Of a DNA stretch of 64,000 nt, positions 293-34,200 are shown in pieces. The stretch is from NCBI GenBank assembly GCA_029953675.1, contig JAMWBK010000011.1:930001-994000 (forward strand), given 5' to 3'. The position numbers and the translations under genes are program-made. The notes under the pieces are model-generated. The model was not told the origin of the DNA. It did not search any database and worked only from the letters and a program-made list of their open reading frames with translations. This DNA comes from Rhodosorus marinus CCMP1338 (lineage: Eukaryota; Plantae; Rhodophyta). Numbering within the stretch: position 1 is the stretch's first letter; every line of letters starts with the position of its first letter.

Positions 293-1876
293 CTAATTCT
301 GGTAGTGGTAGTTGACCTCAACGTCCACCCAACGAGAGCACCTGGATGGACTGTCACAGACCTTGACAATGTAGGGCTGGGTTCCCTGAAGGACTGGATT
401 GTTCAACTGGAATGTTCTCATCGGAAGGAGGGTATCATCCCCGCTAGTTGTGTCGTGGTCCTTGGTTGAAACGGCGAAGGATTTGAACGACCTGTAGCCG
501 AGCGAGCTGGCGTAGTTCCAGACGGGATTATGGTTTCCTCTGATAGTAGGTGTCTTCATGGTGACTGTCCTTCCGTCCACGTCAGTTGCCACAATAGTTA
601 CGTATGGATCAGAGTCACCTGCACCAAAACCGTCCTTGTCCGGAAGGTTGTGTCCTCCGAGTACCTTGAGGATGAGCTTTCCGAACGGGCGCTCGCAGTT
701 TACGCCAGTGAACCCACGCGGGCAGTTGCATACGTAGTCTGCTTCGAGATCTACGCATTCTCCTCCATTCTCGCAAGGGTTTCTTGCGCATTCATCACGG
801 TCCGCGGTCAACTCTGTCCTAAACCTTAGCACGCCCTTGTCCGTCGCTCCTGACGAGTGGTACATGACGTTTTGGGATGATCCAATTCTAACAGGGAATA
901 TTTGGCTGTAGAAGATCAAGTCGTCATCAGACCCGCTGTCGTCATCGAGGACGTGGACCCTATAGTACATCCATTCGTCAACGTTGAAATCGATCTTCTG
1001 GTTCCATTCGGGATTGTTGTTGTCACGGATCACTCTCGTCTGCTGGGTAACCTTGTGTCCGGCGGCGTTGTAAGCTTCCACTTTGACGTACGTATCTGGT
1101 CTCGACCTACCGAAGTAGATGCTAGGGTCCTTATCCGGCAATCCCTCCGCGCGCTGAATGGTGATCGAGAACCTCCCGTTAGTACCCGTTCCCGGACAGG
1201 TGTACATTCTGTTGAGCGTCAGGATGTCGCTTGAGGTCAGGTCGGTTGAGCCTCCCAACGGGTATGCGGGGTTGTACTTGTAGGTCAGAGTCCTGCGGCC
1301 GTTTCCACTCAAGAAATTGTTTCCATAGTGCATGATCGATCTGGTGTCATATCGTACACCGTAATGATCAACATCGCTCCACGACTCCTTGTCGAACTGT
1401 TTTTCGTATAGGTCGTCGTCTGTTCTCACGTTATTGAGGTGCACGTTGAGGTAGGAATCACGGTCTGGGCGGTTGTGTTCGTGGAAGAGGCCAAGAGCGT
1501 GTCCGATCTCATGTACAATCTCCGTGTAGGTGTTTTCAAAGCCATCGTCGCATCCCGATCCAAAGTTGACCGTCTGAACACCTCCCTTAAAACCAATAGT
1601 CTCCGAGAAGCATCTCGGTTCGCTAGCCTGGAATCGGATCCTGTTCCGCGCACGTGTGGACTCGATGAAATTTAGACACGTCGTTTCCTGGTACCGCTTG
1701 CTGCTTCTCTTGATATCGGTTTCCTGCCTGTACGACAGACTCGAGTCGAGCTCGTAGAACACCGTACGATGGGGCCACTTCCTGCTGTCTGATCGAACTG
1801 CTGCCGATCCACTACTAAACTCGATCACCGAGGCGATCGCAGCCATCGTCAATAGTATCTTCACCATTCCAGCCAT
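293..1876 (-). CDS. Secreted astacin (M12A) zinc metalloprotease, SP-astacin-C2-EGF-C2, copy 1 (527 aa)
   Basis: Intronless ORF. Hydrophobic signal peptide; astacin signature [19 protein letters not shown]; Met-turn SIMHY; terminal NRMYTC. Then a C2 domain ([33 protein letters not shown]), a 6-Cys EGF ([32 protein letters not shown]) and a second C2 ([23 protein letters not shown]). Confidence 0.93.
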
Positions 1877-1993
1877 TTCTGATGCTTCTATTGTTCTTTG
1901 CCTTGTTGTAGTCTCTTTGTTCTGTTCTCCTTACTATTCACTGTCTTGACATGCAATTCGAACCCACCGGTGCTGGGGTTCATCGGTTGACTC

Positions 1994-2001
1994 TATAAAT
2001 A
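1994..2001 (-). promoter_or_regulatory. Putative TATA element of astacin copy 1 (TATTTATA on the coding strand)
   Basis: Lies ~120 nt upstream of the ATG, the same spacing as the TATA-like boxes before the other three copies. Confidence 0.4.
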
Positions 2002-2689
2002 CTCACTGCACCTGATGGCAGTCCGAGAAAGATGAAGGTCATGGGGATCTATACTAGCCCAACGGGGTAAAGTTACCTCGTCTTCCAAATCGAGGGTCAC
2101 GTGCTTTCATTATTTGAAAGTCGCCGAACAAGACACGATCGGGGGGGGGGAGAAAGCGCTCCAACGGAAGCAGCCCGCCACTCACAAAACAGCAGCAATG
2201 CCATCAGGACTCTCAGCCAGAAGACAACTCCACTATTGCGCACCTCTTTTGATTCCCCTGTGCAGCCCAACCCCAAAACCTAAAACGAAAACAAGAAAAC
2301 TCCGGCGTACTCCCAGACTGTCAACCAAAGCCAAAAGCATTGTTCGACAATCCGATATCAACAAAAAATTTCGAGCCACTTGTAGTAAATCTGTATCGAA
2401 CAAATGGTCTCGCTCGTCAGCTCCTCCACGCTTTATTTACATTCACGAAAACAAACGTAAATCAGAAAAAGTGCCATTTGGCCACTTACTCATTGAACTT
2501 GTTGTAACAGCTGCAGCCCAAGATGAACACTACAGCCACAATCCGATCTCAAAAAACTAAGTTTAACCCACTCGTACTCACTGTGTGGTATCAAACAACC
2601 AGGTTTTGCTCATCAGCTCCTTCTCACGCCATCGCTACTTTATAAAAATGACGAATAACGGAAACGTCAGTCCTAATCTCATTGGGGGC

Positions 2690-2829
2690 GGGTTCAGTGT
2701 CGCTTTACGGCGATATACTTTCAGCATGGTAGCCGAGGCTCGCTACTGCCGCTTTGGCTTGCACGCTTTAGTTCCTCGCACCTAGTTCGCACTACGCCCT
2801 GCTTAGCGCTTGAAGCCGTCTTAGCAAAA
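2690..2829 (+). mobile_element. 3'-terminal remnant of the REL-type non-LTR retrotransposon family seen at 9799-10790
   Basis: Translates SVALRRYTFSMVAEARYCRFGLHALVP, versus SISLWRYSSDMLAEARHRRLGLHALLP in the 9.8-kb copy. It is followed by AGCGCTTGAAGCCGTCTTAGCAAAA, which resembles the family terminus AGCGCWTCAGGCTATGYTAGTAAA. Confidence 0.7.
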
Positions 2830-3498
2830 GCACGAATCTCATCTCAACAACTTGTGCCGAAAGGTATTTTTTTTACCACCGACCTTTGCAACTGGCAGCC
2901 CAAACGTGCGGCTTGCTTTGTTAACAATTGACATCCACGTTGTTTCTAATTGACCCACAAAGAGCTTGGCAAAGCACATTAAGAAAAGCCCATTCGTAAT
3001 CAAAAACGCTTGTGCAGATGTTCGCTTCTAAAAGCTATCAAAAAACTTCCAGTTTTCCAATAATCTACTTTCTGCAGCTTAGAACCGAAAGCGTGGACCC
3101 TTTTCAGACAGCCCGCATGCCTATTTTTTCTAATATTTTGATACAAGATTCGATGACCGTTAACATTATTTTCGTTATTCGATTTTAACTTGATTGAATT
3201 TGGCTGGGCTCCTTGGAGAATGGAATTAGCTTACATTTTCGAGTTTATTACTTATTTCTAATAAGTTCTTAGTTTGGATGTCGAAAGTTTCGCGCTGTTT
3301 TCGAGTAGTTGGGGATCGGCGAGTTTGGGCTTCTGAAGAAACTAAGGTTCAGGGTGCTGAGGGAGCAGTTAGTAGCGACAAGATTTTCTTTGTACTGTTT
3401 TAGTTGTGAACTAGCTGAAATTACAAGATGATTAGACCCGGTATATATTCGCAGAAGCCCCGAATCTAGTAGAGTAAAGATCGTTCTCTATGGGCATA

Positions 3499-5070
3499 TC
3501 AGTTGTGGTAGTTGATCTCTACGGTCACGTAGCGGTCACAGGTCTGTTGGTGGTCACAAGCTTGGACAATGTAAGGGTTTCCAGCTGGGACCGGGTTACC
3601 AAGCTGGAACGTCGTCGGTGGTAGCAGCGTGTCATCTCCGCTCAGCGTATCGTCATCCTTGGTGTACACGGTGATCGATTTGAAAGAGCGGTAGCCAAGC
3701 GAGTCCGCGTAGTTCCAGACAGGGTTGTGGTTGCCACCGATCACCGGCGTCTGCATGCTCACCGTGTTTCCGTCAATATCCCTCGCGACAATCTTCACAT
3801 ACGGATCGGACTTTCCCGCTCCGAATCCGTCCTTATCCGGCAGGTTGTGCCCTTCAAGGACCTTCAGGATCAGCTTTCCGAACGGACGTTCACAGTTGTC
3901 ACCGGTGAAGCCACGTGGACAGTTACAAATATAATCCGCCTCCAGGTCCACACATTCTCCTCCGTTCTGGCAAGGGTTCCTAGCACACTCGTCCCGGTCT
4001 GCAACCATTTCCGTTCGGAACCTCAGTACACCCTTATTCGTCTCTCCGGGTGAGTGGTACATCACATTCTGCACATTTCCAATTCTCATTGGGAACATTT
4101 GGCTGTGGAAGATTTCGTCGTCCGACCCGGTGTCCTCGTCACGAACATGCAGTCTGTAGTACATCCATTCGTCGACGTCAAAATCGAATCTCTGGTTCCA
4201 AACCGGATTATTGTTGTTATCGATCACACTGGTCTTCTGCGATATTCTCTGTCCGGAAGCATTGAAAGCCTCGATCTTGACGTAAGTATCGGGTTTCTTC
4301 CTACCAAAGTATACACTTGGATCCTTATTGGGCAGTCCCTCCGCCTTCTGAATGGTAATTGAGAACCTCCCGTTCGTACCCGTTCCGGGACAGGTGTACA
4401 TTCTGTTGAGCGTGAGTATGTCACTCCTACTGAGAGTAGTGGAGCCTCCCAAGGGATACGCAGGATTGTATTTGTACGTCATTGTCTTGCCACCGTTTCC
4501 ACTCAAAAAGTTGTTCCCGTAGTGCATAATGGATCTGGTATCGTATCGAACTCCATAGTTGTCAACATCCTTCCATGACTCCTTCTCGAACTGCTTCTTG
4601 TACCGGTCGTCATCTGTTCTCACGTTGTGCAGGTACACATTGATGTAATCGTCACGATCGGGACGGTTGTGCTCGTGGAAGAGACCAACCGCATGTCCGA
4701 TCTCATGAACAATCTTGGTGATGGTGTTTGCAAATCCGTCATCACAGCCAGGCCCAAGATTGACCTTCTGAACGCCTCCCTTGAGTCCAACACCTTCAGA
4801 AAAGCAATTCGACTCACTGCCCTGGAATCGGATCCTGTTTTTCGCGCTTGATGATTTGATAAACTTGAGGCAAGTCGCGTCTTTGTATAGGCTGAAGGCT
4901 TTCTTGATATCTGTCTTTTGTTTGTATGAAAGCGACCTGTGAAACTCGTAGTACACTTTTCGATTTGGCCACTTCTTGCCGTTAGATCTGACGGCGGCTG
5001 TTGCAGAGCAGAACTCGATAACCACCGCGATCATCACCAAAGCGATGAACATATTTACAAGTCTCGACAT
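3499..5070 (-). CDS. Secreted astacin-C2-EGF-C2 metalloprotease, copy 2
   Basis: [24 protein letters not shown], two C2 domains and one EGF. The ORF is open to 5103; the ATG at 5070 (MSRLVNMF) aligns with the paralogue starts. Confidence 0.93.
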
Positions 5071-5190
5071 TTCTCCTTTATGTTGTTTTCCTTCTCGTGC
5101 CAAATTGTATTCTAATTTCTGTTCTCCTTCTTCCTTCTCGTTGTTGTTGGTTCCTCAAGCCCATCCACCTCTCATGCAAGGCTCAGACAG

Positions 5191-5198
5191 TATATATA
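5191..5198 (-). promoter_or_regulatory. Putative TATA box of astacin copy 2 (TATATATA)
   Basis: Lies ~120 nt upstream of the ATG at 5070. Confidence 0.45.
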
Positions 5199-6687
5199 GT
5201 CACACACTCAGAGCATCTACACCCAGAACGAATGCGTTTCTCCATCAGGACCGGAGCCCACGGGACGATAGCGCAAAAGATACATGAAGTAAAAAGAAGT
5301 GTTAACACACACCACAAACCCTCGATTCAACGGAATACTTAGCCAGCAGCAATTCCGTCTAAAAACGCTTAGTTCTATACAACCGCCCCAAAAACCCCAA
5401 CTTGGCCTGAATCATCCAAATCCGATACCATTTTCTCAGAAAGCACTCCATTGCTTCACAGAGCTTATCTCCTCGTTAGAAACAATTCGGGTGCTGACGG
5501 CTCGACGGCAGTTATCGATGGAGCTCGGCGAGGATCGCCTGGAATCAGATGAGCCATTAAACCGCAACGCTCGTGCAGAGTAAAAGGCCAAAGAAAAACA
5601 TATTTTTTGATATATCGAAATTCTTGCCTACCGTCAGGTTGAGTAAGGAACCCAATGCATCTTCCCCAATGATCTTTCCTCGGCCTACTCTGGTCTGGTC
5701 TAGAAACTAAGGCTTTTCATCTGTAACGATTCGGGGGAACATGGCATTTCCTGAATCGTTTTATCAAATAGTTTTCCATGAACTCGCCTTATGGTAAGAA
5801 ATTGGAATATTCAATTTTCCGTGTTTCCTTAGAAATTGACTCATTTAGGACAAAATCTATGGTTCTGCACGGGGAAATCTGACGTAAGAAAAATGTCGTT
5901 TAGTTTGCTGTTTTCAAACATTTTCCTGTTTTTTCATGTATTTGCAATTTGTTTTTTAAGATGTGATTAGATTATTTAACAATATTATATGTTTGATTTA
6001 TAGGTAGTGGCAAGCTTTATGATCGCCCAATAGAAATCCAGTCCTTGATATGCCGAAGTATCGCTCACTTTTTTCAATGAGAAACTCCCCTCGTTTTGAT
6101 CTTTTTTGGGACTTGGTGAAAAGTTCTGAATTTCATACTTCATCGATTATCCAATGGTTGCCTATTATGTTCCCGGAATTAGTCGATCAGCGAATGATAT
6201 GAACAGAGAAGAATACCAAAGCCAATCAGCCACTATGGATGGAGTTAATTGTCGAAGTTTCTCTTCTGGGGTCCTGGTGTGTTCAGTGCTTGGTTTGGTT
6301 GATCGTTGGAGTGGATCCGCAAACTGTTCTGTTCTCCACGGGAGGCTTAATATGTATTATCTATCTACTAAAATTGAAGGCTTGCATTGATTATCCACTC
6401 CTGGGCACTCTTGGAGGTTTGTTGGAACTGGGTGCCCTCCATTCTTGTCATTGCTATTCAGAAAACTTTGCCCTTGTGACTGAATGGCGAAGCTCCTGGG
6501 GCTTTCGACTACGACGATACCAACCCTGCCACATAAAAGCAAACAAGATACCCAGTTCTTTCCCAGCTTTTGCTTTGTTTAGATGCGTGTTAACTGAAGT
6601 GTTGATTCTAGGTCATTTTTCCATAATCACAAACTGCGGCACTACGTGATAACAGGTTGTTTTGCAAAGTTTGACTCTCTATACATG

Positions 6688-8259
6688 TCAGTTGTGGTAG
6701 TTGATCTCTACGGTCACGTAGCGGTCACAGGTCTGTTGGTGGTCACAAGCTTGGACAATGTAAGGGTTTCCAGCTGGGACCGGGTTACCAAGCTGGAACG
6801 TCGTCGGTGGTAGCAGCGTGTCATCTCCGCTCAGCGTATCGTCATCCTTGGTGTACACGGTGATCGATTTGAAAGAGCGGTAGCCAAGCGAGTCCGCGTA
6901 GTTCCAGACAGGGTTGTGGTTGCCACCGATCACCGGCGTCTGCATGCTCACCGTGTTTCCGTCAATATCCCTCGCGACAATCTTCACATACGGATCGGAC
7001 TTTCCCGCTCCGAATCCGTCCTTATCCGGCAGGTTGTGCCCTTCAAGGACCTTCAGGATCAGCTTTCCGAACGGACGTTCACAGTTGTCACCGGTGAAGC
7101 CACGTGGACAGTTACAAATATAATCCGCCTCCAGGTCCACACATTCTCCTCCGTTCTGGCAAGGGTTCCTAGCACACTCGTCCCGGTCTGCAACCATTTC
7201 CGTTCGGAACCTCAGTACACCCTTATTCGTCTCTCCGGGTGAGTGGTACATCACATTCTGCACATTTCCAATTCTCATTGGGAACATTTGGCTGTGGAAG
7301 ATTTCGTCGTCCGACCCGGTGTCCTCGTCACGAACATGCAGTCTGTAGTACATCCATTCGTCGACGTCAAAATCGAATCTCTGGTTCCAAACCGGATTAT
7401 TGTTGTTATCGATCACACTGGTCTTCTGTGACATTCTCTGTCCGGAAGCATTGAAAGCCTCGATCTTGACGTACGTATCGGGTTTCTTCCTTCCAAAGTA
7501 TACGCTCGGATCCTTATTGGGCAGTCCCTCCGCCTTCTGAATGGTGATTGAGAATCTCCCGTTCGTACCCGTTCCGGGACAGGTGTACATTCTGCTGAGC
7601 GTGAGGATATCACTCCTACTGAGAGTAGTGGAGCCTCCCAAGGGATACGCAGGATTATATTTGTACGTCATTGTCTTGCCACCGTTTCCACTCAAAAAGT
7701 TGCTTCCGTAATGCATGATGGATCTGGTGTCGTATCTGACTCCATAGTTGTCGACGTCGCTCCATGATTCCTTGTTGAACTGCTTCTTGTACAAATCGTT
7801 GTCTGTTCTTACGTTGTCCAGGTGCACTTTGATATAGGTGTCACGATCGGGACGGTTGTGTTCGTGGAAAAGACCAACCGCGTGTCCGATCTCATGCACG
7901 ATCTCGGTGTAGGTGTTTTCAAATCCGTCGTCACACCCAGACCCAAAGTTCACCTTCTGCACACCGCCTTTGAATCCAGTGGTTTCCGAGAAGCACCTGT
8001 TCTCCTTCGCCTGGAATCGGATCCGGTTCTTCGCGTTTGGTGACTTAATAAACTTGAGACAAGTCGCATCCTTGTACTGCTTGATAGCTCTTTTGATGTC
8101 GGTCTTCTGTCTGTAGGAAAGCGAGCTGTGGAACTCGTAGAACACGGTGCGATTAGGCCACTTCCTCTTGCTAGATCTGATTGCTGCTGTTGCAGAGCAG
8201 AAATCGATCACCACCACAATCATCGCCAACGCGATGAACATATTTACAAGTCTCGCCAT
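6688..8259 (-). CDS. Secreted astacin-C2-EGF-C2 metalloprotease, copy 3
   Basis: Same motifs as the other copies. The start is placed at MARLVNMF (8259) by alignment with copies 2 and 4; the ORF track extension to 8427 is not conserved. Confidence 0.93.
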
Positions 8260-8369
8260 TTCAGGTTGTCTCCTCCCGTCCTTGCTGTATCGCTTGCTCC
8301 TGACTTCTAGTTTTCTTCTTGGTTGCTGTGTTGGTAGATTCCTGCAACCCCTCCACGTTATTTCACTCG

Positions 8370-8377
8370 TATTTATA
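8370..8377 (-). promoter_or_regulatory. Putative TATA box of astacin copy 3 (TATAAATA)
   Basis: Consensus TATA on the coding strand, ~110 nt upstream of the ATG. Confidence 0.5.
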
Positions 8378-9798
8378 CACGGGCAGGCCCACGCGAGGGT
8401 GCAATTAGCTGGCCATGCCATGCTCAAGGAAGTCGGAGCCCAATGCCCATTCGCCGTACAATGAAAATCAAGTTCAAGTCACTGTCCGTCTGCACATCTT
8501 TGCTTACGGAAAATCCTCATTCCAACCATAACTTCCCCTAAAAATAATAGCGTTGATCGGGTGACCTCGATTTAAGTGGGAGCCTAAAACAGCAATAGTG
8601 CCATAAAACTCACCGCCCCGTTTCTTCCCCCCCTAGTACGTTTCAGTCCGGACGCAGGTAACTGCACTGACGCCCAACCTTCAAATTGCATAAATCACCA
8701 ACTATGCTTGATAGAGCTGGTAATATTGCACCTCCTAAAAGAGTGGCGGTCTTGGAAGTGCGGACGGCAAGGCGAGGTGCTGGCTGACCTTTTCGATACA
8801 GACTAAATATCGCGTGCAGTCACGCTTGCGGAATAGCTGTGAGCACCTCGCAATAAAGCAAAGCGTAAAGCTCGGTCCTTCGAGCGCTGATACTGAAACA
8901 CTCATGGCGTGATAGCCCAAAGACGATACAGGAACTTGCACTTCCCTGTGCTTGGTCGTTTCCTGACAAAGCCTAGCTGTAACCGTCGTGATATCTAGAC
9001 TGTGGAGAATAGTCAAGGGCCAAAGTCTCAGAACAGGGCTTCCGAGTAGGTGAATTCTACCAATCATTCCCATCCAAAACCTTCAAACCCCCGCATCTGT
9101 CAAGAAGACCCTTTCGCCAATAAAGGAAACAAAGTCCTCTCTTTCCAACCCAAAAAGGAGAAGCGCCCGAGGTTGGAAAGGCAGCGTTCGATGGCTAACC
9201 AACTTTTCACGATTCCCAAACTTTTATCCAGTGCTCGACCTCCCGGTAAAATATATTCCATTTTTCCGTACGCAACTACTTACTTCCCTTATTCTGAGCT
9301 GTTTCAATGGATACTCAAAGGAGTCTGATTTTAAGGTTTTTTAATTATTTACATGTAAGAATACGTAATGATAGGATTGCAGCCCAACTCTTCTGCAGCG
9401 TAAATCGCAAGAAATCATCAATTTGGTACTTTTTTTCATTTGTGTTTGTTAACCTATGATGCAACGATTCAATTGAAAGCTCCGCAGCTATTCAGGCCGG
9501 CCGAAAACTAGAAAGCTAGGACGCGGTGCCAATCGCTGCCCATATCGGAAGCGGCCGCCAGGCCGCCAGTTTTGTTCGTAGATGCAGTTACCATGTGCCC
9601 TGCACTTAAGGTTTTCCTCTTAGAAACATCTCAATGCAATACGATCCTTTTAGAAAAGAGGCTCTTGATCAGGCCAATGGAAACGTATCCTTGTCATATT
9701 GCACGTCTAATCAACAAATCGGATTCATAGAGAGGACTAATCTCAAATTAATTCTCGTTGTTATCAAAATAATCATTGGATGATCCAATAGACGCTGG

Positions 9799-10790
9799 TT
9801 TTACTAACATAGCCTGATGCGCTGCGCAAACGTACAAGGAAAATAGGGACTAGGAAGAAGAGCATGTAAACCCAGGCGACGGTGGCGCGCCTCGGCGAGC
9901 ATGTCGCTAGAATACCGCCATAGTGAGATACTTGAGCGGCGGAGGAGCACCAGATATTCTTCAGGATATTCGGTAAAGCACTTACGTAGCCACTCCAAAC
10001 TTGACTTTTCCCGACGCCAGAGGTTTCCACAATGAAAGGCTGGAACCCGTGAGACCGGTCCTCTTCCCCGGGAAGACTGGCCATGCTCTCAGAGTACCGT
10101 CGTTCCTTCACGTGGCGAAGTACAGAAGCTGCTGCCCCCTTCCGGAGAGAGGCAGAAGCGAGATGTGTACGGGACACGGGGCAAGTGACAGCGAGGTCCA
10201 CAGATGCTAAGCGTCTGGCTGCTGCGTCCGAGATCAGAAGATCTGCAATGCAACGAGCAGAGGTGGTTGCGGAGGGTGTAATGGGCTTTACTAGCATAGC
10301 CTGAAGCGCTACGAAAGGCGTGAAAAGGAACTAAGAACTAGGGAGGGAAGCGTGCAAACCCAGGCGCCGATACTAGGGGCAGTGCCGCTTCCACCTCGAC
10401 CGTGTAGCCAACTCTTGTCAAGTGTTCGCTCAGGATGTATTTCAGGCGCGTGTGTCTCTTCCTGCGATGACCTCGCATTTGTCCGCAGGAGCCCAGAAAA
10501 TGGTACCCACATCCGTCGATACGGCTCACACGTCCTTGGCAGAAGAAAAGGTGATTAGAATGCCAAGGGGCCTGTGGCAAACCCAAGTAGATGCGTGCCG
10601 CAGTCCGGAACTGGAAGGCGTCCAGTCGTTGGCCCGGTGATGAGGGCAGAGTGGTTAGCCATAGGTGGGATATATGGCCACTGACGAGCCGCAGTGGTAG
10701 GCGGAGTAAGTGGTGAGTTGAGCAAGACTGCGTGAGCAGCACTGTGTTGGCCCCAAGTGAGGCTATGTTGCATAGGCTTAACATTTAGTA
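9799..10790 (-). mobile_element. 5'-truncated, decayed non-LTR retrotransposon with a restriction-enzyme-like (REL) endonuclease (CRE-like/R2 group)
   Basis: WLTTLP..FRTAARIYLGLP; zinc-knuckle-like C..D.CGYHFLGSC..RKRH; then ADLLI..DLAVTCP..KERRY..FQPFIVETSG (PD-(D/E)xK REL type). After a frameshift near 10005 it reads LEWLRKCF..SISLWRYSSDML and ends TAGTAAAA. No reverse transcriptase is present. Confidence 0.8.
10287..10376 (-). mobile_element. 90-bp copy of the same family's 3' end, inserted into the element with a GCCC target-site duplication
   Basis: Flanked by GGGC at 10283-10286 and 10377-10380 (plus strand) and homologous to 9799-9885. Removing 94 bp joins EAALP to ITPSATTSARCIADLLI in frame. 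Confidence 0.8.
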
Positions 10791-10902
10791 TCTTGTTCGT
10801 TAAAAGGCTGGCTTTGTTTTATGTACTAGTTGAAGTTGTGGTGTTACCGTTCCTCTGTGTTCAGCTAAGCTTTTCCTAGTTCTACATTTCTCTATTTGCA
10901 TC

Positions 10903-12477
10903 CTAGTTGTGGTAGTTGACCTGTACGTTTACCCAACGTTGGCAATTCGACGGGTTGTCGCACACTCGAGTAACGTACGGTTGAGTGCCTTGTGGGACCG
11001 GGTTTCCAAGCTCGATCGTCGTCGTAGGTAGTAGTGTGTCATCTCCGCTGAGCGTATCATCATCCCTGGTATACACGGTGATCGACTTGAACGACCGATA
11101 GCCAAGCGAGTCCGCGTAGTTCCAGACAGGGTTGTGGTTGCCACCGATCACCGGCGTCTGCATGCTCACGCTGTTTCCGTCAATATCCCTCGCGACAATC
11201 TTCACATACGGATCGGACTTTCCCGCTCCGAATCCGTCCTTATCCGGCAGGTTGTGTCCATCCACTACCGTGAGGATCAGCTTTCCGAACGGACGTTCAC
11301 AGTTGTCACCAGTGAATCCCCGCGGGCAGTTGCAGATGTAGTCCGCTTCCAGGTCCACACATTCTCCTCCGTTCTGGCAAGGGTTCCTAGCACACTCGTC
11401 CCGGTCTGCAACCATTTCCGTTCGGAACCTCAGTACACCCTTATTCGTCTCTCCGGGTGAGTGGTACATCACATTCTGCACATTTCCAATTCTCATTGGG
11501 AACATTTGGCTGTGGAAGATTTCGTCGTCCGACCCGGTGTCCTCGTCACGAACATGCAGTCTGTAGTACATCCATTCGTCGACGTCAAAATCGAATCTCT
11601 GGTTCCAAACCGGATTATTGTGGTTATCGATCACACTGGTCTTCTGCGATATTCTCTGTCCGGAAGCATTGAAAGCCTCGATCTTGACGTAAGTATCGGG
11701 TTTCTTCCTACCAAAGTATACACTTGGATCCTTATTGGGCAGTCCCTCCGCCTTCTGAATGGTGATTGCAAATCTCCCGTTCGTACCCGTTCAGGGACAG
11801 GTGTACATTCTGTTGAGCGTGAGGATATCACTCCTACTGAGAGTAGTGGAGCCTCCCAAGGGATACGCAGGATTATATTTGTACGTCATTGTCTTGCCAC
11901 CGTTTCCACTCAAGAAGTTGCTTCCGTAATGCATGATGGATCTGGTGTCGTATCTGACTCCGTAATTGTCGACGTCGCTCCATGATTCCTTGTCGAACTG
12001 CTTCTTATACAAATCGTTGTCTGTTCTTACGTTGTCCAGGTGCACTTTGATATAGGTGTCACGATCGGGACGGTTGTGTTCGTGGAAAAGACCAACCGCG
12101 TGTCCGATCTCATGCACGATCTCGGTGTAGGTGTTTTCAAATCCGTCGTCACACCCAGACCCAAAGTTCACCTTCTGCACACCGCCTTTGAATCCAGTGG
12201 TTTCCGAGAAGCACCTGTCCTCGCTCGCCTGGAATCGGATCCGGTTCTTCGCGTTTGGTGACTTGATAAACTTGAGACAAGTCGCATCCTTGTACTGCTT
12301 GATAGCTCTTTTGATATCGGTCTTCTGTCTGTAGGAGAGCGAGCTGTGGAATTCGTAAAACACGGTGCGATTGGGCCACTTCCTTTTGCCAGATCTGATT
12401 GCTGCTGTTGCAGAGCAGAACTCGATTACCGCCACAATCATCGCCAACGCGATGAACATCTTTGCAAGTCTCGCCAT
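10903..12477 (-). pseudogene. Astacin-C2-EGF-C2 copy 4, split by one in-frame TGA at 11791-11793 (may yield a 228-aa astacin-only protein)
   Basis: The two ORFs (11791-12477 and 10903-11634) are in the same frame. Paralogues have GGA (Gly) where this copy has TGA. No other lesion seen. Confidence 0.85.
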
Positions 12478-27872: not shown

Positions 27873-29234
27873 ATGGAGCCATATGGCAATGACCATCTGT
27901 TTCACGACTCTACTCTTGCCTTTTCCTCTGATGTGGAGAAGTGGCTTCGAGATCAGGGGTCGTCTGAAGGCGACCTGAGTCAGCGGCGAGACGTTTTTCG
28001 GACTCGTCTGGCGACCAAGCGATGTGTTGTTGTAGCTGGATACGAAGCATGCAGAGATGCGCTTGAGGAGAAGGAGTTTGTTGCATCTCAAGCTTACAAT
28101 GAGCTGCTTTCTGGTGTCATGGGTGAGACCACTCTCCTTACGATGGAGGAAGACGGTGAGCTGCTGAAAGCGACCAAGATGTTGCTCCACGGGACGATTT
28201 TGAAGTCAATGGATCATATCGTATTCACGTCACTGATTCCCAAACTGGAAGAGCGACTAGATAAGCTGTCAGGAAAACCCGTGAACCTGTATGAAGTCGT
28301 TCGTGACTGTATAGCGGACTCAATCGTCTCCGAGGTTATCGGACCGCACCATATCGACGAACGCCAGCAGCTAGATTTGCTCCTCAAGGACCACTTTCGC
28401 GCTGCTTCGAGGCCACCAGTGAAGCTCAAGCTGGGCAAGATTTGGATGTCAGCTTTTCAGCGCGGAATTGAGGCTCGGGATAAGCTGCTCGCAAAATTCG
28501 AGGCTGTAGTCAAGAACTTTGAACCTTCCGAGGGCGAGTCCTGTTCTGCTGATTGTTCTTCCCTGTTATGTGCGATCTTCACGGAGAACAACAATTGGAA
28601 GATGGATAACAAGACGGCACTCAGCACCAAGCACCTCGCGGGGATTCTGTTAGTGCTCAGCAACACGATTATTCCGAAAACGGTGGCGACGCTCGTCGCC
28701 TCGACCTGCGCGTCGATCACACTGGACATCTCGCTGTTCGAGAAGGCCCACAACGAGGCAAAGTCGTGCCAAGTCGACATCAAGAGCTGCGCTGGGATGC
28801 AGGAAAACTGCTCCGAAACCATACGGCTCTGCACCAAAGAAACGCTGCGACTTTGGCCCGCGCTCATCGCGGCTCCGAGAAAGTGCAACAATGACGTCAT
28901 CTTCCGAGGCTATAAGATCCCAAAAGGCCGCTATGTGATCATCATGTTGTTGGCAGGCAACCGGGACCCAGCTTCGTACGGTCCTTCGGCGAACGAGTTC
29001 TCGGTGAAGAGATGGAAGGTGACTCCCCCACCTCCGGAGCCGTTGAGCTTTGGGGGTGGACCCCGTTCCTGCTCGGGACGCGACCTTGCCGAGAAGATCA
29101 GCGTCGCCGTCATCTGCAAGCTGCTTCAGAAATACTCGTCGTGGCAGCTCAAGAAGGGCAGCAATCCTCTCGACTACAAATGGTTTCCAGTTTCTGCGCA
29201 TCGAGAACCCGTCAAATTTGTCTTCACACCTTGA
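27873..29234 (+). CDS. Cytochrome P450 with an atypical I-helix
   Basis: K-helix KETLRLWP (ExxR) and heme motif FGGGPRSCSG. The N-terminus may be incomplete (possible upstream exon). Confidence 0.92.
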   Translation: MEPYGNDHLFHDSTLAFSSDVEKWLRDQGSSEGDLSQRRDVFRTRLATKRCVVVAGYEACRDALEEKEFVASQAYNELLSGVMGETTLLTMEEDGELLKATKMLLHGTILKSMDHIVFTSLIPKLEERLDKLSGKPVNLYEVVRDCIADSIVSEVIGPHHIDERQQLDLLLKDHFRAASRPPVKLKLGKIWMSAFQRGIEARDKLLAKFEAVVKNFEPSEGESCSADCSSLLCAIFTENNNWKMDNKTALSTKHLAGILLVLSNTIIPKTVATLVASTCASITLDISLFEKAHNEAKSCQVDIKSCAGMQENCSETIRLCTKETLRLWPALIAAPRKCNNDVIFRGYKIPKGRYVIIMLLAGNRDPASYGPSANEFSVKRWKVTPPPPEPLSFGGGPRSCSGRDLAEKISVAVICKLLQKYSSWQLKKGSNPLDYKWFPVSAHREPVKFVFTP

Positions 29235-31243: not shown

Positions 31244-34200
31244 TTACAGAGCGTTTGGAGTCGGTCCTTCGCTCAGAGCTTGTACATTTGCATCCTTCGC
31301 GAGGCTAAGGCTTGTAGAATAGCTCTCAATGAGGTTATCGATGGGCGTCCGTTCGGGTTTGACCCCGCGGCTGACCATCTCCATGATCGTTGCTCGTGCC
31401 TCTCCCAGAAGTCCGTCCTGAATGTACTCTTTCACCAGCGTGTGGTACGAGAGCTCCTGTGGGGTGGTCTTCCGGAGCACCTTGCTGAGTATCCTCCACA
31501 GTCCAGCAAAGTCGCGCTCCTTGATGTGGGCATCCAACACAACTGAGTAGGTTCTCGCAGACGGTTCCATCTGTCGCTCCAGCATCGTCTTCAAGTGCTC
31601 CTGAGCGCGTTGGATCCGACCAAGCCTAATTGAGGCGTCCACCCCAATCTCAAGCAACTCCCTCCCGCAGTATTGGGACGAGCGCTCCCGTGCTTCCAAA
31701 ATCTCCAGAGCTGTATCAAAGTTTGACATCTTCATGGACGTACAGGCGGCGGCTACGGCCCCTTCGATAGAGACTGGGAGGTTTTCGCGCATCATATAGT
31801 AGTACACGTTCACGACAGACTCGCCAGTGCATCTCACGATCAGCTGATTGCATGCTGATGCAGCCAAGCACAGCTTTCGCTTCTGGGCGTCAGCAAACAC
31901 GGACATAGCACTTTGAATCATACCGCAGCGTACCAGCGCTTCTACCGCGACGGTGTACAGGCTGACTGGAGGGTTCCTCAGAGCCCTGAACGCGTCCTCA
32001 AGCACTTTGCTCACGCGTTCAGCATCGCCCATTCTTCCAGCGTCAGCAACGATCGCACTGAACGTTTGCACGCCAGGTCTCACATTTGCCTCTTCCATGT
32101 GTCCGAGTACATCCATACCATTCTCCTCACTCGTCAAATAGCCCAAACGCGCGAGTTGCACAAATACTAGCTCGGATAGCGGAATTTTGAGCTTGAGGGC
32201 CTCCCGGTACAGGTTCCATGCGACCTCGCCCTCCCCGCAATCGATGTGCGCTGACATTCGCGCCGATAACAAGTTTGCGTCCTGATCGAATCCCCTGCGC
32301 TGAGCACCTTCGTAGACAAGTTCGGCGCCGGAGAGATCACCATCTCTCCCGTACGCCACGATCAAAGACGCAAACACCTCAGAGGAGAGCCTTATGTGCC
32401 TCTCCACCATCTCATTAAAAGCGTGCACAGAGGACCTCAGATTTCCCTCCTTGCCGTACGCGGAGATCAGCGCCGCATAGCTCTCATAGTTTGGCCTGAT
32501 GAGCATGCCCTGCATTTCCCCAAACTTTGCAAATGCCATTCGTGCATCTCCCGCATTGGCCGCAGCGCGAATGAGAAGGTTGTACGACACAACGTTTGGC
32601 TGCTTCCCGCTCATCTTCATCCTCTTGACGGCGAGCTCGGCCTCATTCAGTCTCCCCGCCTCGATATTGGCTCGAACAAAGGAGTTATACGTGGTCGTAG
32701 AGGGCGATACGTCCTCATCGTTCATTTGAGACATCTGCTTCAGGAGTTCGTCCACGTCCCCACCTTCGGCCAACGATCCCATCACCACGTTGAACATGAC
32801 CACATCCGGTTGCAGTCCCCGTCGGCGGGCCTCATTGAACAGTGACAAAACCTTTTCATGATCACCTAGCTTCAGGTAGCCGTCCATGAGGGTTGTGTAA
32901 GTTGCACGGTCCGGTGAGATGTTCTGCCTGTCCATATCGGCGAAAACTCCCATCGCAGCTTCCATGTCCTGCCTCTTCACGTGAGAATCTATCAGGACGT
33001 TCAGCGTCATTGCCCCAACTTCTAATCCCTTTTCTCGCATCTCAGCAAGGCATCGGCTAATCTTCCTCTTGTTGTTTGATTTGCACACGGCTGTGAAATA
33101 CGCTTGGTAGGTGGCCCAATCATAGTCAAGTCCCTCGCGGTGCATGACTGCCAAAACCTGTTCGACCTTTTTCGCTTCGCCTTGCTTGGCGTAGGCGCTG
33201 AGAAGCGCATTGTATGCGTAAACGTTGGGCTCTATGCCACGCTGTTGCATTTCCTCAAAAAGTTTTGCTGCCGTGGACACCCTCCCCGACGATCCATAAG
33301 CCGTTATCAGGGCAGCGTAACTTCGTACTGTACGTTTCACCTTATTCTTCGTCATCTCCCTCCTCAGGAACGGGATCGCATCCACCGTTTCTTCTAATGC
33401 ACAGACATCTATGAGCGATACGTACATATGCTCGTTGACACTAACGCCGTTTCCTTGCATGTAATCGTACAGTTCCAAAGCGGCTTTGTAGTTTCGGGAT
33501 TTTGCATAGCTGTCGAAAAGAGTTCCATAGCAGTGCTCATCTGGATCCATGCCGCCCTTTATCATGCGATTGAACATCATTTCCACGCCGTCATAGTCTC
33601 CCCCCTGCAAGTAAGTTTTCATCAGGGTTGCGTAGGTAACTTTGTCGTATCGAAGATTGCACGACGGCATTCGTTTCAAAACTTTCAGGGCTGAGTCAAC
33701 GTCTCCAGTCTTCGCAAATCCCTTGATGTACGTATTGAAAGTCGACAGATCTGCAAACTTCTCCTTCAGGATGTTTTCGAAGAGGTCTCTAGCCTTCTCC
33801 ATCGAACCTTTCTCCACGAGCGCGTCGAGGACCGAGTTCCATACCACGACAGATTGTTTAGCTGCGCTACCTCTCATTTCCTCCAGCACTGACAGGGCCA
33901 GCTCGATTTTCCCCACTCGGCACATCGCATTAACGAGAGATCCATAGCTGTGCGCGTCGGGTTGGAAACCCACTGCACGCATGTCTTCAAAGAATTTCAC
34001 AGCAAGCTCGTCGTCGTCCATTTTCGCAGCGACGTTGATCGCCGTGTTGAAGGAGAACAAATCCGGTTGGATACCCACGTTCACCATCTCCGAAAAAAGG
34101 CCGAGGCTGGCGTGAAAGTCCCCCCGCTTGAGCTCGGCGTGCATAAGGGTGTTGAACGTAACTCTGTCAAAGGCCACTCCCCTCTCGCTCATTTCCCCCC

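What the first reader, a model, noticed from the sequence alone, without database searches (positions are those of the whole stretch)
293..12477. Four-gene array of secreted astacin proteases with an unusual astacin-C2-EGF-C2 architecture
Seen: four intact or near-intact copies with full zinc-binding motifs, two Asp-rich C2 domains (DKD..D.Y..D.D..DD pattern) and a 6-Cys EGF between them. Established: astacins usually carry CUB, EGF, MAM, ShK or TSP modules; an extracellular Ca2+-binding C2 next to an EGF is best known from perforin. Inference: a family of secreted, calcium-switched proteases that dock on membranes or anionic surfaces, possibly for defence against grazers or microbes or for wall remodelling. 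I do not recall this domain order being described, least of all in an alga.
Basis: partly seen in the sequence, partly recalled or inferred. Interest (0 to 1): 0.85.

Follow-up and report, generated by a model that had tools for sequence, protein, structure and literature searches.

The report
Red-algal astacin–C2–EGF–C2 protease gene array
Four neighbouring genes of a Rhodosorus-type red alga encode secreted zinc proteases fused to two calcium-binding C2 domains and an EGF module. The design is real but not unique: it belongs to a large, almost unstudied family otherwise seen in sponges, and the algal versions lack the usual protease "safety-catch" propeptide.

Summary
Window 293-12477 carries four head-to-tail, intron-less minus-strand genes encoding signal peptide, astacin catalytic domain, C2, calcium-binding-type EGF and C2. 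Pfam E-values are 1e-44 to 1e-49 (astacin), about 1e-26 (C2) and 1e-10 (EGF). Three copies are intact. Copy 4 has one TGA exactly at the protease/C2 linker.

The genes are native to a Rhodosorus-like red alga. Their codon usage matches neighbouring genes, dN/dS is 0.06-0.20, and R. marinus transcriptome-derived proteins are 90-93% identical.

The architecture is not unique. The same or related domain orders occur in hundreds of database proteins. Every hit that carries an organism name is either Rhodosorus or a demosponge (Halichondria, Suberites "BMP-1", Geodia). I found no paper on the C2 modules, and a 2023 astacin review never uses the term 'C2 domain'; the part of its domain list that I could read does not include C2.

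The new point is that the algal clade lacks the aspartate-switch propeptide. The signal peptide abuts the canonical mature N-terminus (AAVRS).

Both C2 domains keep all five Ca2+-ligand aspartates. Their fold is closest to cPLA2 and PLC-delta1; perforin ranks only 42nd-46th.

Most likely these are zymogen-free secreted proteases tethered by Ca2+-loaded C2 domains to anionic surfaces. I rate this a new variant of a known kind, of moderate interest.

The parts
293..1876 (-). Copy 1: intact gene, 527 aa. Signal peptide 1805-1876, astacin catalytic domain 1193-1804, C2a 806-1180, cbEGF 692-802, C2b 305-682.
   Evidence: ORF; Pfam; domain coordinates. It is 92.6% identical to the R. marinus transcriptome-derived protein P0002. 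dN/dS against the other copies is about 0.06.
3499..5070 (-). Copy 2: intact gene, 523 aa counted from the ATG at 5070. The listed ORF runs on to a TTG at 5103.
   Evidence: AlphaFold2 model has pLDDT 88.4. Foldseek matches BMP1 with TM 0.92.
4999..5070 (-). Copy 2 signal peptide (aa 1-24, [24 protein letters not shown]). It is followed directly by AAVRS..KWP.
   Evidence: Mean Kyte-Doolittle hydropathy of residues 7-20 is 2.81. Alignment to mature BMP1 places BMP1 Ala1-Ala2 on A25-A26. Homologues that have a propeptide are cleaved at KR|AAVRD.
4387..4998 (-). Copy 2 astacin catalytic domain (aa 25-228). Zinc motif [19 protein letters not shown] at aa 122-140; Met-turn SIMHY; Cys 67, 89, 109 and 227.
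4003..4374 (-). Copy 2 C2a (aa 233-356). Ca2+ ligands D250, D261, D311, D313, D317/318. Loop 1 carries a VYFG..RKK insertion.
3889..3999 (-). Copy 2 calcium-binding-type EGF (aa 358-394). Six Cys, DRDEC...[10 protein letters not shown].
   Evidence: Notch1 EGF, E 1.4e-25 summed. The consensus was read directly from the sequence.
3505..3879 (-). Copy 2 C2b (aa 398-522). Ca2+ ligands D414, D422, D472, D474, D479/480. Cys505 and Cys511 precede the last strand.
6688..8259 (-). Copy 3: intact gene, 523 aa. Signal peptide 8188-8259, catalytic domain 7576-8187, C2a 7192-7563, EGF 7078-7188, C2b 6694-7068.
   Evidence: The 3' half is 100% identical at nucleotide level to copy 2, and the 5' half is 93-100% identical to copy 4.
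10903..12477 (-). Copy 4: same architecture, interrupted by one nonsense codon. Signal peptide 12406-12477, catalytic domain 11794-12405, C2a 11410-11781, EGF 11296-11406, C2b 10909-11286.
   Evidence: It is 90.5% identical to the intact R. marinus transcriptome-derived protein P0001.
11791..11793 (-). In-frame TGA in copy 4 (GGA in copies 1-3), located exactly at the catalytic-domain/C2a linker (..YTCP*TGTNG..).

Best explanation
The locus is a tandem array of four paralogous nuclear genes of a Rhodosorus-type unicellular red alga. It has been shaped by duplication and gene conversion. The genes encode secreted multidomain astacin (M12A) zinc endopeptidases.

Shown by the evidence:
- The domain order is signal peptide, catalytic domain, C2, cbEGF, C2.
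- All catalytic and structural astacin signatures are intact.
- Strong purifying selection acts on every domain.
- 90-93% identical proteins predicted from R. marinus transcriptomes exist, so close relatives are transcribed.
- The genes belong to a large astacin-C2 subfamily whose other named members are all demosponge proteins.
- The algal clade, unlike the sponge clade, has no aspartate-switch propeptide.

Inferred:
- Signal peptidase itself creates the mature N-terminus (AAVRS, which matches the post-furin N-terminus of the sponge enzymes and of BMP1). The enzyme would therefore be made without a zymogen stage and become active as soon as it is folded and zinc-loaded.
- The two type-II C2 domains bind Ca2+ through their five conserved aspartates. 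At seawater Ca2+ they would hold the protease on an anionic surface through their hydrophobic and basic loop tips.
- The Ca2+-binding EGF acts as a stiff spacer between them.

My preferred target is the alga's own surface: the outer membrane leaflet or the sulfated mucilage and its glycoproteins. The enzymes would then work as surface-tethered matrix or surface-protein processing proteases. This would parallel animal hatching enzymes, membrane-tethered meprins, and the sponge 'BMP-1' reported to process the spicule protein silintaphin-2.

If the TGA in copy 4 is real, that copy would yield an untethered protein consisting of the catalytic domain only.
For: - Architecture and motifs.
- Fold. 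BMP1 gives TM 0.92. C2b matches cPLA2 with rmsd 2.4-2.7 A over about 130 columns, and also PLC-delta1.
- Mature N-terminus: BMP1 A1-A2 aligns to A25-A26. Among 62 aligned homologues, most have a 70-250 aa pre-region with FxGD and a KR|AA site. All Rhodosorus sequences, P0033 and P0006 (full ORF read in L002) go from the signal peptide straight to A[AG][VI]RS.
- The family-specific Glu133 is present. In astacins this Glu binds the new N-terminus (established knowledge).
- Ca2+ ligands are conserved in 47-58 of 62 family members at every position, and loop tips are hydrophobic.
- Selection and nativeness: dN/dS is 0.06 (copy 1 against the others) and 0.18-0.20 (copies 2-4). GC3 is 0.62-0.65, against 0.60-0.64 in the neighbouring genes.
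- Transcription of close relatives: MMETSP/UniProt R. marinus proteins are 92.6% (copy 1) and 90.5% (copy 4) identical.
- Gene conversion: mosaic identity blocks, with similarity confined to the coding sequence.
- Family distribution.
- The split between the pro-less clade and the propeptide-bearing clade is recovered in 200/200 NJ bootstraps. It also holds separately for the protease half (187/200) and the C2-EGF-C2 half (198/200).
- Sponge precedent for a matrix-protein processing role: PMC3280542, citing Muller et al. 2011.
Against: - There are no biochemical data for any member with C2 domains, apart from the sponge paper, which I could not read.
- No dedicated signal-peptide predictor was available. 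The cleavage site could be one residue either side of T24|A25.
- A zymogen-free astacin contradicts the general statement that astacins across all phyla have a prodomain (PMC9848320). An unseen latency mechanism may therefore exist, such as an inhibitor or a C2 domain occluding the cleft.
- I could not inspect model coordinates or PAE, so N-terminus burial and the orientation of the C2 loops are unverified.
- At constant seawater Ca2+ the C2 domains cannot act as a dynamic switch.
- C2a of the algal copies lacks the Cys pair conserved in sponge C2 domains and has a loop-1 insertion, so its binding properties may differ.
- Paralogues with dead zinc sites in R. marinus CCMP1338, and P0033 (HDLGH), keep the scaffold. 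The non-catalytic part therefore has a function of its own that need not be membrane docking.
- The biological role is pure inference.
Confidence: 0.55

Rival explanations
1. This is the first reader's functional idea: an offensive or defensive weapon. The C2 domains dock the protease on foreign membranes (bacteria, grazers, parasites) in a perforin-like way, and the array has expanded under an arms race.
For: There are four tandem paralogues, with divergence concentrated in the C2b C-terminal part and the signal peptide. Extracellular EGF-C2 modules are known from perforin, and perforin C2 and full-length perforin do appear among the fold matches (ranks 42 and 46, E 1e-3). Hydrophobic loop tips suit membrane insertion.
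Against: dN/dS is well below 1 in all domains (0.05-0.30), with no sign of diversifying selection. Copies are homogenised by gene conversion rather than diversified. The C2 domains are no closer to perforin than to cPLA2, PLC-delta1 or synaptotagmins. There is no pore-forming or lytic partner domain. The only published relative (a sponge protein) is linked to endogenous matrix processing.
Confidence: 0.2
2. The C2 domains are not lipid or surface anchors. They are Ca2+-stabilised structural or protein-binding modules that recruit substrates or oligomerise, as CUB and MAM domains do in other astacins. The protease acts in solution.
For: Catalytically dead paralogues and P0033 retain the C2-EGF-C2 scaffold even where the C2a Ca2+ ligands are lost. 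In other astacins the ancillary domains mainly mediate substrate recognition (PMC9848320). Sponge relatives vary the number of C2 and EGF modules freely, as adhesive or spacer modules do.
Against: All five Ca2+ ligands are strongly conserved in both C2 domains across the active members, together with aromatic or hydrophobic loop-tip residues. The best structural matches are Ca2+-dependent membrane-binding C2 domains.
Confidence: 0.2
3. The array is not algal at all. It is contaminating sponge or other animal DNA, or a very recent transfer, mis-assembled into an algal scaffold.
For: All named non-Rhodosorus relatives are sponges. A published review regards astacins outside Holozoa as scattered and HGT-derived, and debunked the one land-plant astacin it retrieved as mite contamination (PMC9848320).
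Against: The genes sit in one contiguous window with PPR, P450, pseudouridine-synthase and GH86-like genes of identical GC3. Independent R. marinus transcriptome-derived proteins are 90-93% identical. The independent CCMP1338 genome carries paralogues of the same pro-less clade on a 3.19 Mb contig. Identity to sponge proteins is only 29-41%.
Confidence: 0.02
4. The genes are decaying or silent duplicates without current function.
For: Copy 4 carries a nonsense codon. The exact proteins are not on record in the protein collection.
Against: Three copies are fully intact. dN/dS is 0.06-0.20. Transcriptome-derived proteins 90-93% identical to copies 1 and 4 exist in another strain. Every catalytic and Ca2+-binding residue is kept.
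Confidence: 0.05

Closest known systems
Sponge astacin-C2 proteins: Suberites domuncula 'bone morphogenetic protein-1' (UniProt H8WG14; Muller et al. 2011, BBA 1810:1178), Halichondria panicea 'nas-14-like' (P0040, P0041), Geodia barretti 'nas-4' (P0239)
   Same: They share the multidomain plan: astacin catalytic domain followed directly by C2, EGF and C2. Halichondria has exactly AST-C2-EGF-C2; Suberites and Geodia have AST-C2-C2-EGF-C2. The zinc and Met-turn motifs are the same, as are the Ca2+-ligand aspartates and the mature N-terminus AA(V/I)R. Both halves of the protein support a single common origin of the architecture.
   Different: Identity is only 29-41%. The sponge proteins have a 60-250 aa propeptide with the FxGD aspartate switch and a dibasic activation site, which the algal proteins lack altogether. 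The sponge C2 domains carry a conserved Cys pair in both C2 domains, while algal C2a has none. The host is an animal rather than a red alga.
BMP1/tolloid and other classical astacins (crayfish astacin, meprins, hatching enzymes)
   Same: The catalytic-domain fold matches (TM 0.86-0.92, rmsd 2.0-2.5 A). Shared features are HExxHxxGxxHExxRxDRD, SxMHY, four conserved Cys and the spacing from the N-terminus to the WP motif.
   Different: There are no CUB, MAM, TRAF or ShK modules; C2 domains take their place. The 2023 family review never uses the term 'C2 domain', and C2 is absent from the part of its domain list that I could read. There is no prosegment, although the review states that astacins of all phyla have one.
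Perforin (MACPF-EGF-C2)
   Same: It has an extracellular EGF immediately followed by a type-II, Ca2+-dependent C2. Perforin C2 (4y1t) and full-length perforin (3nsj) are among the significant fold matches.
   Different: There is no MACPF domain. Perforin ranks only 42nd-46th, behind cPLA2, PLC-delta1, Trichomonas C2 and Munc13. By sequence, the nearest C2 domains outside the family are plant synaptotagmin/E-Syt types. The similarity is one of module combination, not of descent.
Bacterial astacin xenologues (myroilysin; Legionella LegP model NF045530)
   Same: These are astacin catalytic domains outside animals whose latency differs from the aspartate switch (PMC9848320). The LegP model matches the catalytic domain at E 1e-37.
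   Different: The LegP score of 130 bits is far below the 300-bit cut-off, so this is not a member of that family. Myroilysin still has a propeptide (a cysteine switch). None of these proteins has C2 or EGF modules.

Membership tests
Astacin family (MEROPS M12A, Pfam PF01400) | Profile match above the curated threshold | tested here: met
   PF01400 scores 150.8-166 bits against a cut-off of 22.5, covering the full model length 1-189.
Astacin family (MEROPS M12A, Pfam PF01400) | Extended zinc-binding motif HExxHxxGxxHExxRxDRD, including the catalytic Glu and the family-specific Glu | tested here: met
   HEIGHA[VL][12 protein letters not shown] is present in all four copies. H122, H126, H132, E133 and R136-D140 are invariant or nearly so in the family alignment.
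Astacin family (MEROPS M12A, Pfam PF01400) | Met-turn SxMHY with the zinc-proximal Tyr | tested here: met
   SIMHY is present in all four copies.
Astacin family (MEROPS M12A, Pfam PF01400) | Catalytic-domain fold with two conserved disulfides | tested here: met
   Foldseek matches BMP1 3edg at TM 0.92 and rmsd 2.0 A, and astacin 1ast at TM 0.88. C67, C89, C109 and C227 are nearly invariant. The disulfide pairing itself is inferred.
Astacin family (MEROPS M12A, Pfam PF01400) | N-terminal prosegment conferring latency (FxGD aspartate switch); stated for astacins of all phyla in PMC9848320 | tested here: not met
   No residues lie between the 24-aa signal segment and the canonical mature N-terminus. 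In copy 1 an in-frame stop precedes the ATG. This concerns the zymogen form, not the catalytic-domain family, so I file the proteins as astacins of a pro-less variant.
Astacin family (MEROPS M12A, Pfam PF01400) | Zinc-dependent endopeptidase activity | not testable with these tools
   This needs recombinant or native protein.
C2 domain (Pfam PF00168), Ca2+-dependent membrane-binding class | Profile match and eight-stranded beta-sandwich | tested here: met
   PF00168 scores 89-94 bits over two stretches. The AlphaFold2 model shows eight strands for C2b and seven DSSP elements for C2a, one of which (290-311) probably merges two strands. Foldseek matches cPLA2, PLC-delta1, E-Syt2 and ferlins.
C2 domain (Pfam PF00168), Ca2+-dependent membrane-binding class | Five acidic Ca2+ ligands in loops 1 and 3 | tested here: met
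   C2a has D250, D261, D311, D313 and D317/318. C2b has D414, D422, D472, D474 and D479/480. They align to the SDPYV and DxD motifs of synaptotagmin and NEDD4 and are conserved in 47-58 of 62 family members.
C2 domain (Pfam PF00168), Ca2+-dependent membrane-binding class | Ca2+-dependent binding to phospholipid or another anionic surface | not testable with these tools
   This is inferred only from the ligand set and the hydrophobic and basic loop tips.
Calcium-binding EGF (PROSITE EGF_CA type) | Six Cys plus [DEQN]-x-[DEQN]2-C ... C-x-[DN]-x4-[FY]-x-C | tested here: met
   [25 protein letters not shown] was read directly from the sequence. Pfam EGF gives E about 5e-10 and Notch1 EGF gives E 1.4e-25.
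BMP1/tolloid subfamily | CUB (and EGF) domains C-terminal to the catalytic domain | tested here: not met
   There is no CUB hit. C2 domains follow the catalytic domain instead. The 'BMP-1' name of the sponge relative is nominal.
Perforin/MACPF | MACPF pore-forming domain N-terminal to EGF-C2 | tested here: not met
   There is no MACPF hit. Perforin ranks 42nd-46th in the fold search.
Sponge-type astacin-C2 subfamily (unnamed; S. domuncula H8WG14 and relatives) | Astacin catalytic domain followed directly by C2/EGF/C2 modules, with common descent of both halves | tested here: met
   Domain census. Full-length matches of E 1e-60 to 1e-121 cover 85-98% of the query. The protease half and the C2-EGF-C2 half give congruent bipartitions.
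Sponge-type astacin-C2 subfamily (unnamed; S. domuncula H8WG14 and relatives) | Propeptide with FxGD and a dibasic activation site | tested here: not met
   The propeptide is absent from all nine members of the algal-type clade. That clade separates in 200/200 bootstraps.

The most novel reading that the evidence does not exclude
A complete multidomain extracellular protease (astacin-C2-cbEGF-C2) was exchanged long ago between the sponge or early-animal lineage and a stylonematophycean red alga. In the alga the astacin prosegment was then discarded, so that signal peptidase creates the mature N-terminus. This would be the first zymogen-free astacin clade. Spatial control would be taken over by Ca2+-dependent C2 docking: unbound in the low-Ca2+ secretory pathway and engaged only at seawater Ca2+.
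Probability: 0.2. Interest if true: 0.7.

Novelty: new variant of a known kind. Interest (0 to 1): 0.45.

Why it matters
1. It adds C2 domains to the set of ancillary modules known for astacins. It also shows that a very large astacin-C2 subfamily, with hundreds of sponge-type proteins, has gone essentially unstudied.

2. The algal clade is an apparent exception to the rule that astacins are made as zymogens. If confirmed, it gives a natural system for asking how a potent secreted metalloprotease is kept safe without a prosegment.

3. Named members come only from sponges and Rhodosorus, with both halves of the protein telling the same evolutionary story. This is a clean candidate for ancient inter-kingdom transfer of a whole multidomain extracellular protein.

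4. For red-algal biology, it points to Ca2+-dependent, surface-tethered proteolysis in the sheath of a unicellular marine alga.

None of this changes a major paradigm, and the architecture itself is already in public databases. Interest is therefore moderate rather than high.

Tried and rejected
- Literature searches found nothing on C2-bearing astacins or on red-algal astacins. Terms tried were astacin + C2 domain + EGF, astacin + Rhodosorus, astacin + red alga, and astacin + sponge + C2. A placozoan paper that matched was irrelevant.
- The Muller 2011 sponge BMP-1 paper is not held, and a follow-up search found nothing.
- I tried to name the organisms behind the unnamed hits. The listing of cluster members gave almost no names. 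Contig look-ups gave only accession codes that I could not resolve: ERZ25072258, SRR22824290/82 and GCA_012263305.1. A search for the SRR numbers in papers found nothing.
- No gene with exactly the copy 2 product is on record.
- A JGI metagenome scan with the pro-less-clade profile returned only generic astacin catalytic domains at 26-38% identity, with no close relatives. The wider nine-sequence alignment was too divergent to seed a scan.
- A viral-contig scan found no relative, so there is no hint of a giant-virus vector.
- A search with the C2-EGF-C2 tail alone found no other catalytic head attached to this module. Outside the family it hit only plant synaptotagmin/E-Syt C2 domains.
- Recent HGT is rejected on codon usage and on the 29-41% identity to sponges.
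- Intronlessness is rejected as an HGT signal, because the neighbouring genes in the window are also single ORFs.
- One bootstrap run using Biopython's distance calculator timed out and was redone with my own distance code.
- Trees are neighbour-joining only and unrooted, so the direction of any transfer is not resolved.

Full report
WHAT IS THERE

Window 293-12477 holds four head-to-tail ORFs on the minus strand:
- copy 1, 293-1876, 527 aa
- copy 2, 3499-5070, 523 aa from the ATG
- copy 3, 6688-8259, 523 aa
- copy 4, 10903-12477

tblastn with copy 2 finds exactly these four loci in the 64 kb window and nothing else.

Pfam assigns each intact copy an astacin domain at aa 33-228 (E 4.5e-44 to 1e-48), two C2 stretches (E about 1e-25 to 1e-27) and an EGF at aa 362-392 (E about 5e-10). 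My own family HMMs place the borders at catalytic domain 25-228, C2a 233-356, EGF 358-394 and C2b 398-522.

All four copies carry HEIGHA[VL][12 protein letters not shown] and SIMHY. Copy 4 differs from an intact gene by a single codon: TGA at 11791-11793 where the other copies have GGA. That codon lies precisely in the linker between the catalytic domain and C2a, so a terminated product would be signal peptide plus a complete catalytic domain.

WHOSE GENES, AND ARE THEY ALIVE

- The best database hits are two Rhodosorus marinus transcriptome-derived proteins. Copy 1 is 92.6% identical to P0002 and copy 4 is 90.5% identical to P0001. Close relatives are therefore transcribed in another strain, including an intact counterpart of the interrupted copy.
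- The rest of the window encodes a PPR protein, a P450, a pseudouridine synthase and a GH86-like protein. Their GC3 (0.60-0.64) matches that of the astacin genes (0.62-0.65). This argues against contamination or recent transfer.
- dN/dS is about 0.06 between copy 1 and the others (dS is saturated) and 0.18-0.20 among copies 2-4. Every domain lies below 0.3; only the signal peptide is higher, at 0.3-0.5.
- Identity along the genes is mosaic. Copies 2 and 3 are 100% identical at nucleotide level over the 3' half, and copies 3 and 4 are 93-100% identical over the 5' half. Similarity stops at the coding-sequence borders, apart from 73 bp upstream of copies 3 and 4.
- Taken together, this is an old tandem array whose coding regions are homogenised by gene conversion or unequal crossing-over.

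STRUCTURE

The AlphaFold2 model of copy 2 has mean pLDDT 88.4 and pTM 0.70. Foldseek matches the catalytic domain to BMP1 (3edg, TM 0.92, rmsd 2.0 A), TLL-1, hatching enzymes and crayfish astacin. It matches the tandem C2 domains to E-Syt2, ferlins, cPLA2 and synaptotagmins.

A separate EGF-C2b model (pLDDT 91.5) matches best to Trichomonas C2 proteins, PLC-delta1 and cPLA2 (rmsd 2.4-2.7 A over about 130 columns). The perforin C2 domain (4y1t) and full-length perforin (3nsj) rank 42nd and 46th.

Strand order in C2b puts Ca2+-binding loop 1 after the first strand and loop 3 after the fifth, and an extra C-terminal strand closes the sandwich. C2a has the same layout if its long 290-311 strand element is read as two strands. 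This makes both C2 domains type-II topology, like cPLA2, PLC-delta1 and perforin (inference from secondary-structure order).

By sequence, the nearest C2 domains outside the family are plant synaptotagmin/E-Syt types (E 1e-9 to 1e-13). Perforin C2 is a weak hit among many (E 1e-3). The perforin comparison therefore holds only for the combination of modules.

CALCIUM SITES

Alignments to synaptotagmin and NEDD4 C2 domains and the 62-sequence family alignment show all five canonical acidic ligands in each C2:
- C2a: D250, D261, D311, D313, D317/318
- C2b: D414, D422, D472, D474, D479/480

Each position is conserved in 47-58 of the 62 sequences. Loop tips are Trp, Phe or Leu in most members. The algal C2a has a VYFG insertion followed by RKK, and C2b has F416.

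The EGF fits the calcium-binding EGF consensus (DRDEC...[10 protein letters not shown], read directly) and resembles Notch EGF repeats. Three Ca2+-binding modules in a row are therefore predicted. Actual binding was not tested.

THE FAMILY IS LARGE AND MOSTLY PORIFERAN

I classified 123 sequences with my own domain HMMs (the best 120 homologues of copy 2 plus the three intact window copies):

| Architecture | Number of sequences |
|---|---|
| AST-C2-EGF-C2 | 31 |
| AST-C2-C2-EGF-C2 | 19 |
| AST-C2 | 18 |
| AST-C2-C2 | 10 |
| AST-C2-(EGF)n-C2 | several |

Searching with the sponge protein P0040 gives 860 proteins at E<=1e-20. Every hit that carries an organism name, apart from Rhodosorus, is a demosponge:
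- Halichondria panicea ('nas-14-like')
- Suberites domuncula H8WG14 (named bone morphogenetic protein 1; signal peptide, FEGD propeptide, AST-C2-C2-EGF-C2)
- Geodia barretti ('nas-4')

A S. domuncula BMP-1 was published as a retinoic-acid-induced protease that processes silintaphin-2 during spicule formation (Muller et al. 2011, as cited in PMC3280542). I could not read that paper. That H8WG14 is the published protein is my inference from its name and date.

The 2023 family review (PMC9848320) never uses the term 'C2 domain', and C2 is absent from the part of its domain list that I could read; the passage was cut off after MAM. It does not mention red algae. It regards astacins outside Holozoa as scattered and probably HGT-derived.

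The exact domain order is therefore common and sits in public databases, but it is effectively uncharacterised.

THE UNUSUAL FEATURE: NO PROPEPTIDE

In the 62-sequence alignment, most homologues with a complete N-terminus have a 60-250 aa pre-region. It contains the FxGD aspartate-switch motif and a dibasic site followed by AA(V/I)R, for example P0003 ...LQKR|AAVRDTSKLWP.

The window copies read ...VIEFCSAT|[12 protein letters not shown] 24-residue segment with a 14-residue hydrophobic core (mean hydropathy 2.2-2.8) is followed at once by the same mature N-terminus.

phmmer alignment to the mature BMP1 catalytic domain matches BMP1 residues 7-201 to query residues 30-228. Extrapolating back, BMP1 Ala1-Ala2 falls on A25-A26 with identical spacing to the WP motif. 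Glu133 is conserved; in astacins this residue salt-bridges the new N-terminus (established knowledge).

The gene model is safe for three reasons:
- In copy 1 an in-frame stop precedes the ATG.
- The upstream extensions of copies 2 and 3 are unrelated to each other.
- The transcriptome-derived protein P0002 starts at the same Met.

The same layout occurs in:
- P0022 and its tandem neighbour in the R. marinus CCMP1338 genome
- P0033
- P0006, whose full ORF I recovered from contig L002 (MSRGAAWVLFALIAIFTGASAT|AGIRS...)

These nine sequences form a clade separated from the propeptide-bearing, sponge-type sequences in 200/200 NJ bootstraps. The split also holds for the protease half alone (187/200) and for the C2-EGF-C2 half alone (198/200). 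The whole architecture therefore has a single origin, and the algal-type clade is a deep sister group, not nested within the sampled sponge sequences. Identity to them is 29-41%.

The review states that astacins across all phyla have a prodomain. This clade is an apparent exception.

MECHANISM

Shown: these are secretory-type, catalytically complete astacins with two ligand-complete C2 domains and a cbEGF. They are under purifying selection, and close relatives are transcribed in another strain.

Inferred:
- Signal peptidase generates the mature N-terminus, so there is no zymogen stage.
- In seawater (about 10 mM Ca2+, general knowledge) the C2 domains are Ca2+-loaded and hold the enzyme on anionic surfaces.
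- The EGF is a rigid spacer.

I favour the alga's own surface or sulfated sheath as the docking site, with matrix or surface-protein processing as the role. This is by analogy with hatching enzymes, meprins and the sponge enzyme. The evidence for that last step is weak.

It is not favoured because dN/dS is low everywhere, the copies are being homogenised rather than diversified, and the C2 domains have no special affinity to perforin.

A purely structural or substrate-recruiting role for the C2 domains is the main biochemical rival. It is encouraged by paralogues that have degenerate zinc sites yet keep the scaffold (HELGHVLGMYNS and YQLGKVLGMVET in CCMP1338, HDLGH in P0033).

ORIGIN

Named members come only from sponges and Rhodosorus. 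I found no relatives in viral contigs and no close relatives in JGI metagenomes. No other named red alga appears among the best 120 hits.

This disjunct pattern, combined with congruent histories for both protein halves, suggests an ancient transfer of the entire gene between the sponge or early-animal lineage and a red alga, or acquisition by both from a third source. The direction and date cannot be settled with unrooted NJ trees and unlabelled environmental sequences.

VERDICT

- The functional interpretation is plausible but only partly supported.
- The novelty claim is overstated.

This is a new, pro-less, algal variant of a known kind: an astacin of a large sponge-type astacin-C2 subfamily. 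I rate its interest as moderate (0.45).

Noticed in passing
window 56663-61528 (-): A 1621-aa ORF with a GH86-type catalytic region. PDB matches to beta-agarase and beta-porphyranase (5ta1, 8h97, 4aw7) give E 1e-14 to 1e-18 over aa 162-655. It also has Pfam Porphyrn_cat_1, BPA_C and CBM_4_9 domains. To my knowledge GH86 enzymes are known mainly from marine bacteria, so an agarase/porphyranase-like gene in a red-algal nuclear window may itself be worth a look.
   Followed up: partly
window 11791-11793 (-), copy 4: The only lesion in copy 4 is a GGA-to-TGA change exactly at the catalytic-domain/C2 linker. The truncated product would be a complete signal peptide plus catalytic domain. The counterpart in another strain (P0001) is intact. 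It could be a strain allele, a very recent pseudogene or a sequencing error.
   Followed up: partly
window 8260-10902 (spacer between copies 3 and 4): This spacer is about 1 kb longer than the others. It holds two minus-strand ORFs with no Pfam hit (9773-10297 and 10338-10784) and an 86-bp direct repeat at 76% identity (9797-9881 and 10284-10369). It may be the remnant of an insertion.
   Followed up: no
L005 (R. marinus CCMP1338, JAMWBK010000004.1:534124-556181), genes at 6149-8170 and 10001-12058: A tandem pair of pro-less AST-C2-EGF-C2-C2 paralogues, about 30% identical to the window copies. Their zinc sites are degenerate (YQLGKVLGMVET and HELGHVLGMYNS) and C2a has lost its Ca2+ ligands. 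They are apparent pseudo-proteases that keep the scaffold.
   Followed up: partly
L002 1991-3658; L003 and L004 (Logan SRR22824290 and SRR22824282): An unidentified organism (GC 50-54%, intron-less genes) carries two members of the pro-less clade. One has an intact zinc site (P0006; the database model is N-terminally truncated and the full ORF has a signal peptide). The other has HDLGH and a ligand-less C2a (P0033).
   Followed up: partly
window 27873-29234 (+), 31244-34663 (-), 48331-49158 (+), 52040-52990 (+): The neighbouring genes are a cytochrome P450, a 1139-aa PPR protein, a pseudouridine synthase and a weak sulfotransferase-like ORF. All appear as single uninterrupted ORFs, so intron-less genes are not unusual in this window.
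   Followed up: no
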